Sequence record: PV340851.1
Reading direction: 5' to 3' (one strand)
Length of the DNA stretch: 64,000 nucleotides
Positions within the stretch are counted from its first letter, which is position 1, and each line of letters starts with the position of its first letter. The notes beneath the pieces are model-generated. The model worked only from the letters and a program-made list of their open reading frames with translations. It was not told the origin of the DNA and ran no database searches. Shown piece after piece: positions 29,479 through 49,981 of the stretch. Made by a program: the position numbers and the translations under genes.

Positions 29479-30714
29479 ATGAAAGCAGGAGACTTTGCCA
29501 GAAACGGAGGCAAATACCTAGACCGAATCGATACTTTCTTCGATAAAGCACTAGGTAGAAATGGAAAGGAGAATAGATTCCTCACTGACGTTGGCGTCGT
29601 AGAGGTTTCAGGTTTCCAAGTGACTCAGAAGCAGGGAAAGAAGTATAAGAAGTCTAAGTTTATAGACCTGCATGGCATGAAAAGAACTGCTGAGTCAGAA
29701 GCAAAGCAACTGTTCCAATCAATCTGTCTAGCAGGTTTTCGTGGACAGAATAATATAGAATTTACATGTAATTTTCCTGCTGGACCAGATACACCAAGAG
29801 CAATCAGCAGTAGAGACTTTGAATTAGAACTAGCAGACTTTGAAAAGACTGGTGAGTTTGGTGGTCAGGTCAAGGGTGGCAAGAAAGTCAACATGGGTAA
29901 TCAATATGAAGACGATCTTACTGAATCATTGATCGCATACTGCTCTGGTGAACCAGTCAAGAAGTACAAAGATCATGTAGATCAGATTATTGGTGCTCTC
30001 ACGGCAGCATATGGTGAGGGACCAACCAAAGCAATAGGAGAGGGTGGTTTTAACAAAGCACGACCTCTTAAGAAGAGAGGAAGCAACATTATTATCTCTG
30101 CGGGTGGTGCAGATACCCTAAACATCGGGTCTACACTCACAGATATCACACTAGAAATTGCTGGCAAACCTGTATATCTCTCCGTAAAGTTTGGCAGCAC
30201 ACTCTCATTCTTTAACTGTGGCGTCAAAGGTGGTGGCACTGGTAAACTATCTTTGTTCCCTGAGCAGAAATTGAAGTCAGGTGAGATTCCTGCAGACGGT
30301 CAACTATACCTTGACATGTTTGGTATCAACCATCAGAAATTCCTGGATGTTTGGGAAAATTATGGTAAAACTGGTGGTCCTACGGTCCCTGGTCACATTG
30401 CAGAGACTACTTTGAGTTCTAAAGGTAAGAGAGCACTGGAAGATTTGATCAAAAGTGGTGTGGGGTATGGGTATTGGATGTGTCATTACACTGGATCTGC
30501 CCTACATTTCTATGAGATCGATAGAAAGTATATGGAAGACGCTGCTACTCTCCTAAGTAATAAGGTAGAAGTAAACTATGGTGGTGTTTCTGGTACAGGT
30601 AAGCGTATTGATATGATTTTTGAGACGAAGACCTACGAATTCAAATTCAACATCAGAAACAAGCAAGGTGGGGTCTATCCTACCCACAGTAACGGAGACT
30701 ATTATAAAAAGTAA
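29479..30714 (+). CDS. Hypothetical protein, putative PD-(D/E)xK-fold nuclease
   Basis: GNQYE...TLTDITL...YLSVK matches an E...D...SxK active-site variant; follows late promoter 29449. Confidence 0.5.
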   Translation: MKAGDFARNGGKYLDRIDTFFDKALGRNGKENRFLTDVGVVEVSGFQVTQKQGKKYKKSKFIDLHGMKRTAESEAKQLFQSICLAGFRGQNNIEFTCNFPAGPDTPRAISSRDFELELADFEKTGEFGGQVKGGKKVNMGNQYEDDLTESLIAYCSGEPVKKYKDHVDQIIGALTAAYGEGPTKAIGEGGFNKARPLKKRGSNIIISAGGADTLNIGSTLTDITLEIAGKPVYLSVKFGSTLSFFNCGVKGGGTGKLSLFPEQKLKSGEIPADGQLYLDMFGINHQKFLDVWENYGKTGGPTVPGHIAETTLSSKGKRALEDLIKSGVGYGYWMCHYTGSALHFYEIDRKYMEDAATLLSNKVEVNYGGVSGTGKRIDMIFETKTYEFKFNIRNKQGGVYPTHSNGDYYKK

Positions 30715-31916
30715 TGGCAAACGTAACTCAACTCAAGCACTTAGAACACCTAGAAGATGAGATGCTCAACTATGGAGTTGAGGGATGTGTGGCGTCAGTC
30801 AATTTCCTAAAGGAATTGATGAAGATGTTAGGCAAAAAATCTGACGCCAGTGGATTTTTGCAGACAAAATGGGACGGAGCACCATCAGTTATCTGTGGAA
30901 CGTCACCTACAACAGGCATGTTCTTTGTTGGAACTAAGTCAGTCTTTAATAAGACTGAACCTAAGACATGTTTTACTGAAGAGCAGATTGATGTCTGGTA
31001 TCAGGGTGACTTGGCAACTAAACTGAAGTATGCTCTAAGATATTTTCAAGAACTAGACTTTGATGGTGTCATCCAGGGTGATCTTCTGTTCACTGATGAC
31101 ACTCTCGACACTAAAACAGTGGACGGCGAACAGTATTATATGTTCCAACCCAACACTATTACCTATGCTGCCCCTGTAAACAGTCCCTTGGGTAAGCAAC
31201 TCAAGGCAGCAAAGATAGGTGTGGTGTTCCATACCCACTACACAGGTGATGTACTAGCAGATATGCAAGCAAGAGCTGGTGCAAAGGGTGTCAAGGGTAA
31301 TCAGCATGTTGCTGTCATCCAAAACGACACTCCCATCAATAAAGTAACACTTTCTGTTACAGAGATCTCAGAATTAAATCGACACATCGCTAAAATAGAA
31401 AGGATGTGTAAAGTATGTGGGGACTTCTTGGATGATCTTGTGTCAAACTTTGGTACTACTGGCGATGCTAAATTTCATATCTCTACTTATCTTAAACCAT
31501 TTTTCAACTCAGAGATTAGAGACAGGCGCAATGTTGGAAACATTGATGAGACTATATACGCTCTGGTAAACTTCTACGATGCCAAGATGCAGAAGGAGTT
31601 GGCGAAGATCAAGACACCTGCTAACAGGGTGAAGAAGTGCAATCTGGTCTATAAGAGTGAGAACTACCTGATCGATAACGTGTACAAGTTCAAGGCGATG
31701 CTTGCATTGTACAAAGAATTCCAGATTATCAAACAAAAGATCATAGATAAATTGGACCACCTTGAACAATTCAAGACGTTTGTCCAGACTGAGAACGGAT
31801 ACAAGGTGACTACACCTGAGGGATACGTTCTCCACCAGGACGGCAGCATGATCAAACTGGTCAATAGACTAGAGTTTGCCTACAACAACTTCACCCTACA
31901 GAAACAATGGCGCTAA
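30714..31916 (+). CDS. Conserved protein with ATP-dependent ligase / nucleotidyltransferase motifs
   Basis: TKWDG (motif I), IQGDLLF (III), VVFHT (IIIa), PEGYVL (IV) and IKLVNR (V). Confidence 0.65.
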   Translation: MANVTQLKHLEHLEDEMLNYGVEGCVASVNFLKELMKMLGKKSDASGFLQTKWDGAPSVICGTSPTTGMFFVGTKSVFNKTEPKTCFTEEQIDVWYQGDLATKLKYALRYFQELDFDGVIQGDLLFTDDTLDTKTVDGEQYYMFQPNTITYAAPVNSPLGKQLKAAKIGVVFHTHYTGDVLADMQARAGAKGVKGNQHVAVIQNDTPINKVTLSVTEISELNRHIAKIERMCKVCGDFLDDLVSNFGTTGDAKFHISTYLKPFFNSEIRDRRNVGNIDETIYALVNFYDAKMQKELAKIKTPANRVKKCNLVYKSENYLIDNVYKFKAMLALYKEFQIIKQKIIDKLDHLEQFKTFVQTENGYKVTTPEGYVLHQDGSMIKLVNRLEFAYNNFTLQKQWR

Positions 31917-32470
31917 ACTGTATCAAATGCTATTTTACCTTCGGTAGGTTTCAACCACCCACCACAGGTCACAAAGAGAACTTCGATGGGGTGAAACGCA
32001 TCGCGGGTGGGCATGACTATAGGATCTATATTTCTCAGACATTCGATGAGAAGGGCAAGAATCCTTTGCCACCTGACAGGAAACTGTTTTATATGGAGAA
32101 GATGTTCCCAGAACACAAGGGCAAGATCTTTTCTGGACCTAAAGATCCTGTAGCTATCATGCAAGATCTTATGATGGCAGGGTATAATGAGGTTATATTC
32201 TTGGTAGGATCTGATAGAGTAAACGCTATGCAGTTCCTTCATAAATACAACGGAAAGGATTTTTCCTTTCGCAAGATTGAAATACGATCTTCAGGTAGCA
32301 GAGATGCTGACGGTGATACGTTTGCTATTTCAGGTACAAAGATGAGACGTGCAGCATTTGCTAACGATTTCAAACTCTTCCGCCAGGGTATACCCAGGGC
32401 ATTGAATGATAAAGACTGTAAGATGATGATGGATGAGATTAGAAAAAACCTGCCAGCAAACTTTAAATGA
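31907..32470 (+). CDS. HxGH-superfamily nucleotidylyltransferase (cytidylyltransferase-like)
   Basis: FTFGRFQPPTTGH, VGSDRV and ISGTKMR. Confidence 0.85.
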   Translation: MALNCIKCYFTFGRFQPPTTGHKENFDGVKRIAGGHDYRIYISQTFDEKGKNPLPPDRKLFYMEKMFPEHKGKIFSGPKDPVAIMQDLMMAGYNEVIFLVGSDRVNAMQFLHKYNGKDFSFRKIEIRSSGSRDADGDTFAISGTKMRRAAFANDFKLFRQGIPRALNDKDCKMMMDEIRKNLPANFK

Positions 32471-32745
32471 AAAATTTTAAAGAACTAAAGAACAAAGCGT
32501 TCCAAGAAGGTTTTAGACATAAGAAAACATTCTGTGAGGGTGACGTTGTTATGTCTGCTGTCACAGGTGAGAAGGGTAGAATACACAGAGCAGGTGTCAA
32601 CTATGCAATCTGTGTAACAGAGTCTGGAACCATGTTTCGCGCATGGGTAAAAGATCTGCGCGAGGTTGCAACAATTGAAACCATAAATAAAGAAAGGAAA
32701 AGCAGTATCTTTACAAATAATGGAAAGGCAAAAACCAATCAATAG
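32467..32745 (+). CDS. Small beta-barrel (SH3/KOW-like) hypothetical protein
   Basis: EGDVVM...GEKGRIHRAGVNYAIC...MFRAW; ATGA-coupled to the nucleotidyltransferase. Confidence 0.65.
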   Translation: MKNFKELKNKAFQEGFRHKKTFCEGDVVMSAVTGEKGRIHRAGVNYAICVTESGTMFRAWVKDLREVATIETINKERKSSIFTNNGKAKTNQ

Positions 32746-33490
32746 CGTTCAGCATAACGATGAGTTTTCCAAGGCACTCATCGAGTCCTATGGTCGCTGG
32801 ATGGGCGGCGCAGGGTTTGGGTGGCACCTTAATGAAGAAGGAATTCCTGCCGAGCAGAAGCAAGGTGAGGAACAACCTACCCGTGAAGGTGGTGCTGACG
32901 CTTCAACATCGATTCCCGATCTTTCTGGTAAGGAGGAGAAGAGTGATGAAGGACCTAAAGATATCAAAGCAAATGCAGGTGCTCCTGATCCTGCTACCGA
33001 TCTTCGCGTCGGTGCAGGTGTCAAACAGTCTCACGGAGCAGAAATTAAAGACACCACGAAGGTGGTTGCAAGGGAGGCAAAAGGTGATTGCTGCTCTTAC
33101 TGCGGAGGGGAAGGGTGCTCCCGCTGTCAGAAGGAAGATAAGGAAGTAAAGAAAGAGACTGTTGAGTTTGAACTTAACGGTGAGACATACATCTTTGAAG
33201 CAGAAAAGAAGAAAGGACTTGACGGCAAGGCATGCTGGAAAGGTTATAAGCAGATGGGCACCAAGAAGAAGGGTGGCAAGACTGTTGACAACTGTGTCAA
33301 GGCAGGTTACGAACCCGAAGGTCAAGTGCTTGGTGAAAAGAAACTTGATCCCGTAGGTAAGGAAGACAAGGACATCGATAACGACGGTGACCACGATAAG
33401 TCTGACAAGTATCTACTTGCTCGCCGTAAGAAAGTTACCAAACTGATCGGCAAGAAAAAGAAGATGAAGGAAGAAGCTGAAAAAAAGTAA
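32720..33490 (+). CDS. Charged low-complexity late protein, possibly extended by a -1 frameshift to 33585
   Basis: Late promoter at 32683; contains CWKGYK and DIDNDGDHD motifs; ends GAA AAA AAG TAA. Confidence 0.8.
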   Translation: MERQKPINSVQHNDEFSKALIESYGRWMGGAGFGWHLNEEGIPAEQKQGEEQPTREGGADASTSIPDLSGKEEKSDEGPKDIKANAGAPDPATDLRVGAGVKQSHGAEIKDTTKVVAREAKGDCCSYCGGEGCSRCQKEDKEVKKETVEFELNGETYIFEAEKKKGLDGKACWKGYKQMGTKKKGGKTVDNCVKAGYEPEGQVLGEKKLDPVGKEDKDIDNDGDHDKSDKYLLARRKKVTKLIGKKKKMKEEAEKK

Positions 33491-33607
33491 AGAAGCCAGT
33501 GGTTGAGATCATGCCTGAGATTGACGACGGCGAACAAGATCGTAAACCAATGAAACCTGGCAAACTGAAGAACAAGAATAAATAATCTTGCACCTTGCTA
33601 TAAGATC

Positions 33608-33820
33608 ATGCTTGCATTCCTACTACCACTCGCATCGAAGATTGTCGATGCTGCTATTGCTAAGATTCCCGACGATGAGGATCTGGGTGAGAAACTGATT
33701 GAAATCTGCCTACACATTTTGCGTAAGGCAGTATCACTGACCAAAACAGATATTGACGACCAACTACTTGCGGTAGTTGAGAAAGCAATTGCCACCCGAG
33801 AAGAAGCACCAGCTGAGTGA
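33608..33820 (+). CDS. Hypothetical protein
   Basis: 70 aa, after late promoter 33578. Confidence 0.75.
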   Translation: MLAFLLPLASKIVDAAIAKIPDDEDLGEKLIEICLHILRKAVSLTKTDIDDQLLAVVEKAIATREEAPAE

Positions 33821-33829
33821 ACATAAATG

Positions 33830-33860
33830 GGGACCTTAACGGTCCCTTTTTTTATAAATA
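33830..33860 (+). terminator. Terminator followed by a consensus T4 late promoter TATAAATA
   Basis: GGGACC-TTAAC-GGTCCC plus T tract; TATAAATA at 33853-33860. Confidence 0.88.
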
Positions 33861-49831: not shown

Positions 49832-49905
<74 letters not shown>

Positions 49906-49909
49906 CCTC

Positions 49910-49981
49910 GCTTGCTTAGCTCAGCGGTAGAGCATCTCGTTTACACCGAGGCGGTCGGCGGTTCGATCCCGTCAGCAAGCA
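49910..49981 (+). tRNA. tRNA-Val (anticodon TAC)
   Basis: Acceptor stem GCTTGCT/AGCAAGC; anticodon loop TTTACAC; T loop GTTCGAT; CCA not encoded. Confidence 0.96.

What the first reader, a model, noticed from the sequence alone, without database searches (positions are those of the whole stretch)
33467..33585. Candidate programmed -1 frameshift (A_AAA_AAG) extending a late protein
Seen: ORF 32720 ends GAA AAA AAG TAA, placing A_AAA_AAG (33481-33487) directly before the stop. The -1 frame continues for 32 codons (VKKPVVEIMPEIDDGEQDRKPMKPGKLKNKNK) to TAA at 33585, filling the otherwise empty gap. That stop overlaps a late promoter (33578), as the stops of g19, g20, regA and hsp20 do. An SD-like AAGGA lies 9 nt upstream. 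Established: A_AAA_AAG with an upstream SD drives -1 shifting in dnaX and IS elements. Inference: two isoforms made in a fixed ratio. Alternatives are a homopolymer sequencing error or a separate 24-aa ORF starting at 33511.
Basis: partly seen in the sequence, partly recalled or inferred. Interest (0 to 1): 0.7.

Follow-up and report, generated by a model that had tools for sequence, protein, structure and literature searches.

The report
Conserved cyanophage -1 ribosomal frameshift site
A marine cyanophage gene ends in a classic slippery sequence that is kept unchanged in many related phages, so some ribosomes probably slip back one base and add a short tail, giving a second protein form that genome annotations have missed.

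Summary
The window is Synechococcus phage Sf-CH3. ORF 32720-33490 ends GAA AAA AAG TAA, with A_AAA_AAG (33481-33487) in phase, and the -1 frame stays open for 32 codons to TAA 33583-33585.

Comparative evidence supports a programmed -1 ribosomal frameshift:
- The heptamer plus an adjacent 0-frame stop is identical in 84 distinct junctions. Six are named isolates, and upstream proteins go down to 38% identity.
- In 47 distinct upstream ORFs, 1 of 514 internal Lys-Lys pairs uses this coding, against 47 of 47 terminal pairs.
- The distance from heptamer to the conserved ATG is always 24, 27 or 30 nt. The codons before the ATG (V-E-V) vary only at third positions. Thirteen junctions have no start codon there.
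- Syntenic orthologues in other phages encode the same junction as one continuous ORF.
- Most relatives carry GGAG 11 nt upstream and a hairpin 6-7 nt downstream, with compensatory changes.
- Contigs from four sequencing runs confirm A7.

In this genome the accessory signals are weaker and the extension is a shortened, domain-less version. I found no published report. It is a new member of a known kind (dnaX/IS3-type). No protein evidence is available.

The parts
32683..32689 (+). ATAAATA late-promoter-like motif about 30 nt upstream of the gene's ATG (function not shown)
   Evidence: 17 matches in the window against 9.8 expected, 14 of them on the + strand. Pattern match only.
32720..33490 (+). 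0-frame ORF (SfCH3_160, 256 aa, phrog_4359, function unknown) ending ...AEKK-stop
   Evidence: 3333 homologues at E<=1e-5, and the best 120 all end in KK.
33467..33471 (+). SD-like AAGGA, a degenerate form of the AAGGAGG of close relatives, 9 nt before the heptamer
   Evidence: Among the 84 junctions, GGAGG or GAGG ends 7 nt upstream in 22, and (A)GGAG ends 11 nt upstream in 55.
33481..33487 (+). Slippery heptamer A_AAA_AAG in X_XXY_YYZ phase
   Evidence: Identical in 84 distinct junctions. Used at 47/47 terminal KK pairs against 1/514 internal KK pairs.
33488..33490 (+). 0-frame stop TAA immediately 3' of the heptamer
   Evidence: TAA in 41, TGA in 41, and one codon later in 2 of the 84 junctions.
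33487..33585 (+). -1 frame extension of 32 codons (VKKPVVEIMPEIDDGEQDRKPMKPGKLKNKNK) plus TAA. The trans-frame product would be 288 aa.
   Evidence: It is an in-frame 44-codon deletion derivative of the 76-codon Sf-CH11-type extension.
33495..33531 (+). Predicted hairpin starting 7 nt after the heptamer (-13.7 to -14.6 kcal/mol). The conserved ATG lies inside it.
   Evidence: z about -1.7 to -1.8. It can form in 90% of cells across 21 lineage-A sequences but shows no covariation. The equivalent hairpin in lineage B has compensatory changes.
33511..33513 (+). Invariant ATG, the Met of the conserved (V/I)E(V/I)MP motif. It is a possible secondary start of a 24-aa ORF.
   Evidence: The motif is internal in continuous ORFs of other phages.
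33578..33584 (+). ATAAATA late-promoter-like motif overlapping the -1 frame stop, upstream of the 70-aa ORF at 33608
   Evidence: The same motif is present at the end of the Sf-CH11 and Syn1 extensions. Function not shown.

Best explanation
This is a programmed -1 ribosomal frameshift of the bacterial dnaX/IS3 type.

Proposed mechanism (inferred):
- Ribosomes translating ORF 32720-33490 reach GAA AAA AAG with the TAA stop next.
- Most terminate and give the 256-aa protein.
- In a fraction, the lysine tRNAs on AAA-AAG re-pair one base back on A-AAA-AA.
- Decoding then continues in the -1 frame (GTA AAG AAG CCA ...).
- This adds 32 residues, giving a 288-aa isoform that ends at TAA 33583-33585.
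- The adjacent stop codon, a hairpin 7 nt downstream (33495-33531) and a weak upstream SD-like element would slow the ribosome on the slippery site.

The added segment carries the conserved (V/I)E(V/I)MPE(I/L)DDG motif. In relatives it is followed by a DUF6321-like or DUF3008 module. In this genome only a short lysine-rich tail follows.

Shown: the sequence features and their conservation. Inferred: the slip itself, its efficiency and the role of each stimulator.
For: 1. Heptamer and stop. 59 of 80 IMG/VR loci found through protein homology alone carry the in-phase heptamer, as do Sf-CH3, Sf-CH11, S-H9-2, Syn1, S-PM2 and S-RIM32. The 0-frame stop is adjacent, or one codon later in 2 junctions. 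Upstream proteins go down to 38% identity. Adding a pattern scan gives 84 distinct junctions.

2. Codon choice. In 47 distinct upstream ORFs, 1 of 514 internal KK dipeptides is an in-phase A_AAA_AAG, against 47 of 47 terminal ones.

3. The spacer behaves as coding sequence. The distance from heptamer to ATG is 24, 27 or 30 nt only (67/11/6 junctions). The three codons before the ATG have entropies [0.27, 0, 1.15], [0, 0, 1.0] and [0, 0, 1.22] by codon position. 13 of 84 junctions have no ATG, GTG or TTG in that stretch.

4. In-frame orthologues. P0253 (L193-L196) sits in the same gene neighbourhood and reads ...GKKPEIEIMPEIDD... as one ORF. Its DNA (GAAGGTAAGAAGCCAG) aligns with the window's AAAAGTAAAGAAGCCAG. 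About 30 further distinct in-frame versions exist.

5. Stimulators. (A)GGAG ends 11 nt upstream in 55 of 84 junctions. In lineage B a hairpin starts 6 nt after the heptamer. It has 90.7% of cells paired against 31-60% for slid controls, and 4 pairs with compensatory changes, at least two of them at synonymous sites. Hairpins start 6-7 nt downstream in the other lineages too.

6. The ATG is inside the hairpin, which does not favour free initiation there.

7. A7 is confirmed by contigs from 4 runs with no gaps.

8. A_AAA_AAG is among the most shift-prone -1 sites in E. coli and is the natural dnaX site (PMC5009743).
Against: - There is no protein, ribosome-profiling or reporter evidence.
- In this genome the accessory signals are weak. 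The SD-like element is degenerate (AAGGAAG). The hairpin z-score is only about -1.8, and lineage A shows no covariation.
- No single RNA structure is shared by all lineages.
- The extension here has lost the domain that relatives carry, so its function could be decaying.
- Half of the junctions have GTGA, which would allow a coupled restart.
- A clade exists in which the same module is a separate gene with its own start.
- The host's lysine tRNA set was not examined.
Confidence: 0.8

Rival explanations
1. These are two separate genes. The downstream piece is made only by its own initiation, at ATG 33511 or GTG 33499, perhaps coupled to termination at TAA 33488-33490. Under this view the A-run is only the coding of a lysine-rich C-terminus.
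For: - Relatives are annotated this way: Sf-CH11_157, S-H9-2 gp085, Syn1_164 and S-PM2p146.
- The ATG is invariant.
- 41 of 84 junctions read GTGA, a start/stop overlap.
- In one clade the module really is a separate ORF with an ATGA overlap.
Against: - The codons upstream of the ATG are conserved in codon fashion, and 13 of 84 junctions have no start codon there. The window's first -1 codon is GTA.
- Spacer lengths change only by multiples of 3.
- The heptamer is fixed at 47/47 terminal KK pairs against 1/514 internal ones.
- (V/I)E(V/I)MP is an internal motif in continuous orthologues, so the Met is conserved as a residue, not as a start.
- The ATG is buried in the hairpin.

This reading may still hold as an additional route.
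Confidence: 0.1
2. The fusion is made by transcriptional slippage. RNA polymerase adds an extra A in the A7 run, so a fraction of mRNAs encode the fused protein in one frame.
For: The A7 run is invariant. An A8 transcript would give an extended product that differs by only one extra lysine at the junction. Transcriptional realignment at A-runs is an established route (PMC5009743, title and abstract).
Against: - From general knowledge, efficient bacterial slippage usually needs runs of about 9 or more. Here the run is exactly 7.
- The G that follows, the codon phase and the adjacent stop are all invariant.
- An SD-like element and a hairpin sit at the distances typical of ribosomal frameshifting.

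This could not be tested, because the sequencing runs were available only as contigs.
Confidence: 0.07
3. This is an artefact or a decaying gene: a homopolymer sequencing error or a recent frameshift mutation in what should be one continuous ORF.
For: Continuous orthologues exist. In this genome the extension is shortened.
Against: The same A7G-plus-stop is present in 84 distinct junctions from independent isolates and metagenomes. Contigs from four runs show no indel. None of the best 120 homologous proteins is fused.
Confidence: 0.01

Closest known systems
Escherichia coli dnaX -1 frameshift (tau/gamma)
   Same: The slippery heptamer A_AAA_AAG is the same. Both have an upstream SD-like element; in most relatives GGAG ends 11 nt upstream, against 10 nt in dnaX (from memory). 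Both have a downstream hairpin a few nt after the site and make two products from one gene. The site's identity as the dnaX site is from PMC5009743.
   Different: In dnaX the shifted frame stops almost at once, so frameshifting makes the shorter product. Here it bypasses an adjacent stop and makes the longer one. The gene family, organism and protein function are unrelated. In this window the SD-like element is degenerate and closer (7-9 nt).
IS3-family (IS911, IS150, IS3) orfA-orfB transposase frameshift
   Same: A_AAA_AAG is used near the end of the upstream ORF, and a -1 shift fuses it to a downstream overlapping ORF. Upstream SD and downstream structures act as stimulators, and a nearby 0-frame stop is present (general knowledge; clusters and stimulators are discussed in PMC4066793).
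   Different: This is not a mobile element and there is no transposase. The downstream ORF is short (27-95 codons) and overlaps the upstream ORF by only a few codons.
Bacillus subtilis cdd -1 frameshift (CGA AAG, short C-terminal extension)
   Same: The shift occurs just before the stop codon, has an upstream SD-like stimulator and adds a short C-terminal tail (from memory; not checked here).
   Different: The slippery motif differs, and here there are conserved domains in the extension of relatives. The cdd extension has no known conserved module.
Phage tail assembly chaperone frameshift (lambda G/GT type)
   Same: It is a conserved phage -1 frameshift that yields a short and a C-terminally extended form in a set ratio (general knowledge).
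   Different: The position and family differ. This gene lies between a cytidylyltransferase-like gene and a Hoc-like head protein gene, not before a tape-measure gene. The motif also differs from lambda's G_GGA_AAG.

Membership tests
Bacterial-type programmed -1 ribosomal frameshift cassette | X_XXY_YYZ slippery heptamer in phase with the upstream ORF | tested here: met
   A_AAA_AAG at 33481-33487 is in phase. It is identical in 84 distinct junctions and is avoided at 513 of 514 internal KK sites.
Bacterial-type programmed -1 ribosomal frameshift cassette | -1 frame open across the site and under protein-coding selection from the site onward | tested here: met
   Variation is at third positions before the first ATG. 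Spacer lengths are 24, 27 or 30 nt. 13 of 84 junctions have no start codon. Continuous orthologues exist.
Bacterial-type programmed -1 ribosomal frameshift cassette | Upstream SD-like stimulator about 10-14 nt before the site | tested here: inconclusive
   GGAG ends 11 nt upstream in 55 of 84 relatives. The window's lineage has GGAGG at 7 nt, and the window itself has only AAGGA at 9 nt.
Bacterial-type programmed -1 ribosomal frameshift cassette | Downstream RNA structure starting about 5-9 nt after the site | tested here: inconclusive
   In lineage B the feature is met: 90.7% of cells paired, 4 pairs with compensatory changes, z-scores down to -4.9. In the window's lineage the hairpin 33495-33531 can form (90% of cells) but shows no covariation and has z about -1.8. 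There is no alignment-wide consensus.
Bacterial-type programmed -1 ribosomal frameshift cassette | Trans-frame protein demonstrated | not testable with these tools
   No proteomic or ribosome-profiling data could be reached. No paper mentions the S-PM2 homologues.
Bacterial-type programmed -1 ribosomal frameshift cassette | Host decodes AAA and AAG with a single tRNA-Lys(UUU), the basis of A_AAA_AAG shiftiness in E. coli | not tested
   The window encodes only tRNA-Arg(tct) and tRNA-Val(tac). The host tRNA set was not examined.
Translationally coupled overlapping genes (stop/start overlap) | A start codon overlapping or directly next to the upstream stop | tested here: not met
   The window reads AAG TAA, which gives GTA in the -1 frame, not a start codon. 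The nearest starts are GTG 33499 and ATG 33511. 41 of 84 relatives do have GTGA.
Transcriptional slippage site | Long homopolymer (typically 9 or more A/T in bacteria) | tested here: not met
   The run is exactly A7 in all 84 junctions. The length threshold is from general knowledge.
Phage tail assembly chaperone frameshift (G/GT) | Located directly upstream of the tape-measure gene, with chaperone-family proteins | tested here: not met
   The neighbours are a cytidylyltransferase-like gene, small ORFs and a Hoc-like Ig head protein.

The most novel reading that the evidence does not exclude
The frameshift could be a dosage device for a capsid-internal or ejected protein. It would attach interchangeable small basic C-terminal modules (DUF6321-like, DUF3008, or a bare lysine-rich tail) to a set fraction of molecules.

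The same module is delivered in three interchangeable ways across cyanophages: in-frame fusion, frameshift, or a separate gene with a T4-like capsid-targeting leader. The shift rate could also depend on the host's translational state during infection.
Probability: 0.12. Interest if true: 0.8.

Novelty: new member of a known kind. Interest (0 to 1): 0.6.

Why it matters
- **Annotation.** T4-like cyanophages are among the most abundant viruses in the sea. This gene and its small downstream ORF are annotated as two hypothetical genes, or as a gene plus a gap, in every isolate genome I inspected. A conserved frameshift would add a hidden protein isoform to hundreds of genomes (314 phage records match this region) and correct their annotation.

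- **A test case for recoding.** It would be a clear recoding case in a T4-like phage translated by cyanobacterial ribosomes. That gives a direct way to ask whether SD-like and hairpin stimulators act in picocyanobacteria.

- **An evolutionary series.** In-frame, frameshifted and separate-gene versions of one syntenic locus coexist. This is a natural series for studying how frameshift sites arise and are kept.

Tried and rejected
- **RNAalifold over all lineages.** No consensus structure was found. The structures are lineage-specific, so I tested them per lineage.
- **Pfam on the 256-aa protein and the extension.** Nothing was found. The 'DUF6321' label of Sf-CH11_157 was not reproduced by this Pfam copy. 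Only the S-PM2 extension scored above threshold, as DUF3008.
- **ESM Atlas.** This returned only unnamed viral clusters and gave no function.
- **In-frame fusions among the best 120 homologues.** None were found. Fusions appeared only through the exhaustive search with a downstream piece.
- **Reads.** Runs were available only as Logan contigs. This settles A7 in the DNA but says nothing about rare A8 transcripts or expression. The RNA runs held under 0.1 of the sampled words.
- **Literature.** I found no report of this frameshift. The recoding review (first 300,000 characters held) and the PRFect paper mention no cyanophage.
- **The other in-phase heptamer in the window (14042, minus strand).** Rejected, because its ORF is spurious.
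- **The (V/I)E(V/I)MP motif as a T4 gp21-type cleavage site.** The recalled L/I-x-E pattern does not fit consistently, so I dropped the idea.

Full report
**What the window is**

The region is 100% identical to Synechococcus phage Sf-CH3 (PV340851.1). This is a T4-like cyanophage isolated on Synechococcus WH8102 from the sponge Petrosia ficiformis. In the record, ORF 32720-33490 is SfCH3_160, a hypothetical protein. The stretch 33491-33607 carries no annotation.

**Check of the observation**

- The ORF ends GCT GAA AAA AAG TAA.
- A_AAA_AAG (33481-33487) is in X_XXY_YYZ phase.
- The -1 frame from 33487 gives 32 codons (VKKPVVEIMPEIDDGEQDRKPMKPGKLKNKNK), then TAA at 33583-33585.
- AAGGA lies 9 nt upstream.
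- The ATG is at 33511.
- ATAAATA at 33578-33584 overlaps the -1 stop.

The heptamer is rare in this window. There are 8 copies on the + strand and 10 on the - strand in 64 kb. Only two are in phase in ORFs of 80 aa or more, and the other ORF is spurious. Contigs from four public runs cross the A7 run without any indel.

**Conservation of the site**

I retrieved 80 IMG/VR loci using only the upstream protein as query.
- 59 loci have the in-phase heptamer at the end of the homologous ORF.
- 14 loci belong to a clade with a different arrangement.
- 7 loci run off the contig.

The isolates Sf-CH11, S-H9-2, Syn1, S-PM2 and S-RIM32 carry the heptamer too. A pattern scan added more loci, giving 84 distinct junction sequences.
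- All 84 have AAAAAAG.
- 41 are followed by TAA and 41 by TGA. In two, one codon (CAA) comes first.
- This holds in lineages whose upstream protein is only 38-45% identical to the window's and whose flanking DNA is quite different.
- The best 120 protein homologues all end in KK, and none is fused.

Codon choice is the sharpest result. In 47 distinct upstream ORFs, 514 internal Lys-Lys pairs include a single in-phase A_AAA_AAG. All 47 terminal Lys-Lys pairs use it.

**Is the stretch between the stop and the ATG translated?**

Three results say it is.
- The -1 frame reads V-(K/S/T)-x-(A/P)-x-V-E-V before the invariant ATG. The last three codons vary essentially only at third positions: GTT/GTC/GTA, GAG/GAA, GTG/GTA/GTT.
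- The distance from the heptamer to the ATG is 24, 27 or 30 nt in all 84 junctions. Indels therefore come in whole codons.
- Thirteen junctions have no ATG, GTG or TTG in this stretch. S-RIM32 is one of them.

In the window the first -1 codon is GTA. These codons can only be reached from the upstream ORF.

**In-frame orthologues**

I ran an exhaustive search with a relative's -1 ORF product. It showed that (V/I)E(V/I)MP is an internal motif in continuous ORFs.

P0253 (298 aa) shares three features with the window protein:
- the N-terminal motif;
- the ACWKGYK motif;
- an EF-hand-like ...LLRARK segment (the last aligned by eye).

P0253 then continues in frame...EGKKPEIEIMPEIDDSDP....

P0253 lies in the same gene order as the window gene:
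- a DUF6267 protein;
- a cytidylyltransferase-like protein;
- a ~94-aa ORF;
- this gene;
- a small ORF;
- a ~200-aa ORF;
- DUF7207.

Its junction DNA, GAA GGT AAG AAG CCA GAG ATC GAA ATT ATG CCA, is visibly homologous to the window's GAA AAA AAG TAA AGA AGC CAG... read in the -1 frame. About 30 further distinct loci have this continuous form.

**A third architecture**

In the 14 loci without the cassette, the upstream homologue ends ...GMKGKK-stop. An ATGA overlap starts a separate ORF, MKPFKDFREECGC...KKKSGNVEVMPTINDG..., which carries the DUF6321-like module. The same module is therefore supplied in three ways: fused in frame, behind the heptamer, or as a separate gene.

**Stimulatory elements**

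*Upstream.* (A)GGAG ends 11 nt before the heptamer in 55 of 84 junctions. The preceding codon changes (AAG, CAG, AGG, GGG, GCG) while GGAG is kept. The window's lineage has GGAGG or GAGG 7 nt upstream in 22 junctions. The window itself has the weaker AAGGAAG.

*Downstream.* Most sequences fold into a hairpin that begins 6-7 nt after the heptamer. The mean z-score against shuffles is -2.3.

- **Lineage B** (33 distinct sequences). 90.7% of cells pair, against 31-60% for slid registers. Four pairs show compensatory changes. At least two of these are at synonymous sites: GCA/GGT to GCT/GGA, and GTG/ATC to GTA/ATT. One caveat is that the structure was derived from these same sequences.
- **Lineage A** (the window's). 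The hairpin 33495-33531 can form in 90% of cells, but there is too little variation to show covariation. Its energy is unremarkable (z about -1.8).

No single structure fits all lineages. The conserved ATG lies inside the hairpin in lineages A and B, and in its 3' arm in lineage C.

**The extension**

Across junctions the -1 ORF is 27-95 codons. It comes in three forms:
- a short lysine-rich tail;
- a tail plus a DUF6321-like module (...APPGKKYERMVKHIKK...AYATAWKHKNKNK);
- a tail plus DUF3008, as in S-PM2 (E 6.7e-6).

The window's 32-codon version keeps the start and the end of the Sf-CH11-type 76-codon version. It lacks 44 codons in between, which is an in-frame deletion. The DUF6321-like module also occurs inside or at the end of many other, mostly longer proteins. 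The function of the 256-aa protein remains unknown.

**Interpretation**

The best explanation is a programmed -1 ribosomal frameshift of the dnaX/IS3 kind. It gives a 256-aa product and a 288-aa product.

- Independent or coupled initiation of the small ORF may occur as well. It cannot explain the fixed heptamer, the codon-type conservation before any start codon, or the continuous orthologues.
- Transcriptional slippage at A7 would give nearly the same protein and cannot be excluded here. The short run, the fixed G and phase, and the flanking elements fit the ribosomal route better.
- Sequencing error is excluded.

**Novelty**

I found no report in the searchable literature. All inspected GenBank records annotate two genes or leave a gap. 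The mechanism is canonical, so this is a new member of a known kind.

**Limits**

There is no protein, ribosome-profiling or reporter data. The host tRNA-Lys set was not checked. The 'late' timing rests only on ATAAATA motifs at 32683 and 33578. In this genome the accessory signals and the extension are reduced.

Noticed in passing
window 32467-32745 (+); also L065:3088-3558, P0122, P0130, L208: The 92-aa ORF just upstream of, and overlapping, the frameshift gene starts MKNFKELKNK. In the clade without the cassette, the separate VEVMP/DUF6321 ORF starts MKSFKQLREEC, MKSFRQFCEEC or MKTYRQFCEEC. T4 internal proteins IPIII and IPII start MKTYQEFIAE and IPI starts MKTFKEFTST. [quoted passage not shown] This gene block may therefore encode capsid-internal proteins. 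The ORF at 32467 is the only one in the window with such a start.
   Followed up: partly
window 32467-32745: This 92-aa ORF is annotated 'ribonucleotide reductase alpha subunit' in Sf-CH3 and many relatives (phrog_4808 label). It is far too small for that enzyme and has no Pfam match. The label looks like a propagated mis-annotation.
   Followed up: partly
window 33829-33860: A strong intrinsic-terminator-like hairpin (GGGGACC..GGTCCC plus a T-run, 33829-33853) is followed at once by TATAAATA (33853-33860), the T4 late-promoter consensus. This is one of only two copies in the window. It lies upstream of the Hoc-like Ig head protein gene.
   Followed up: partly
window, whole: ATAAATA occurs 17 times against 9.8 expected, with 14 copies on the + strand. 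Copies include 32683 (about 30 nt before the frameshift gene's ATG) and 33578 (before the 70-aa ORF). This fits a cyanophage late-promoter motif, but function was not tested.
   Followed up: no
window 33324-33435: The segment encoding KEDKDIDNDGDHDKSDKYLLARRKK (an EF-hand- or dockerin-like loop) attracts extra contigs with 4-8 mismatches that continue into unrelated sequence. It also matches the middle of several other phage protein families (phrog_38880, phrog_764, phrog_3326). It appears to be a short module shared by paralogous genes.
   Followed up: no
window 30714-33490: There is a chain of overlapping ORFs: 30714-31916 (400 aa; its syntenic counterpart in L193 carries DUF6267), 31907-32470 (cytidylyltransferase-like), 32467-32745 and 32720-33490. 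PHROG profiles of 678-764 aa cover two or more of these pieces. This suggests fusion and fission of the block in other phages.
   Followed up: no
window 49832-49981: Two adjacent phage tRNA genes, tRNA-Arg(tct) and tRNA-Val(tac). There is no tRNA-Lys in the window.
   Followed up: no
window 14042 (minus strand, ORF 14260-13898): This is the only other in-phase A_AAA_AAG in an ORF of 80 aa or more. The ORF lies antisense to two long + strand genes and is almost certainly not a gene.
   Followed up: yes
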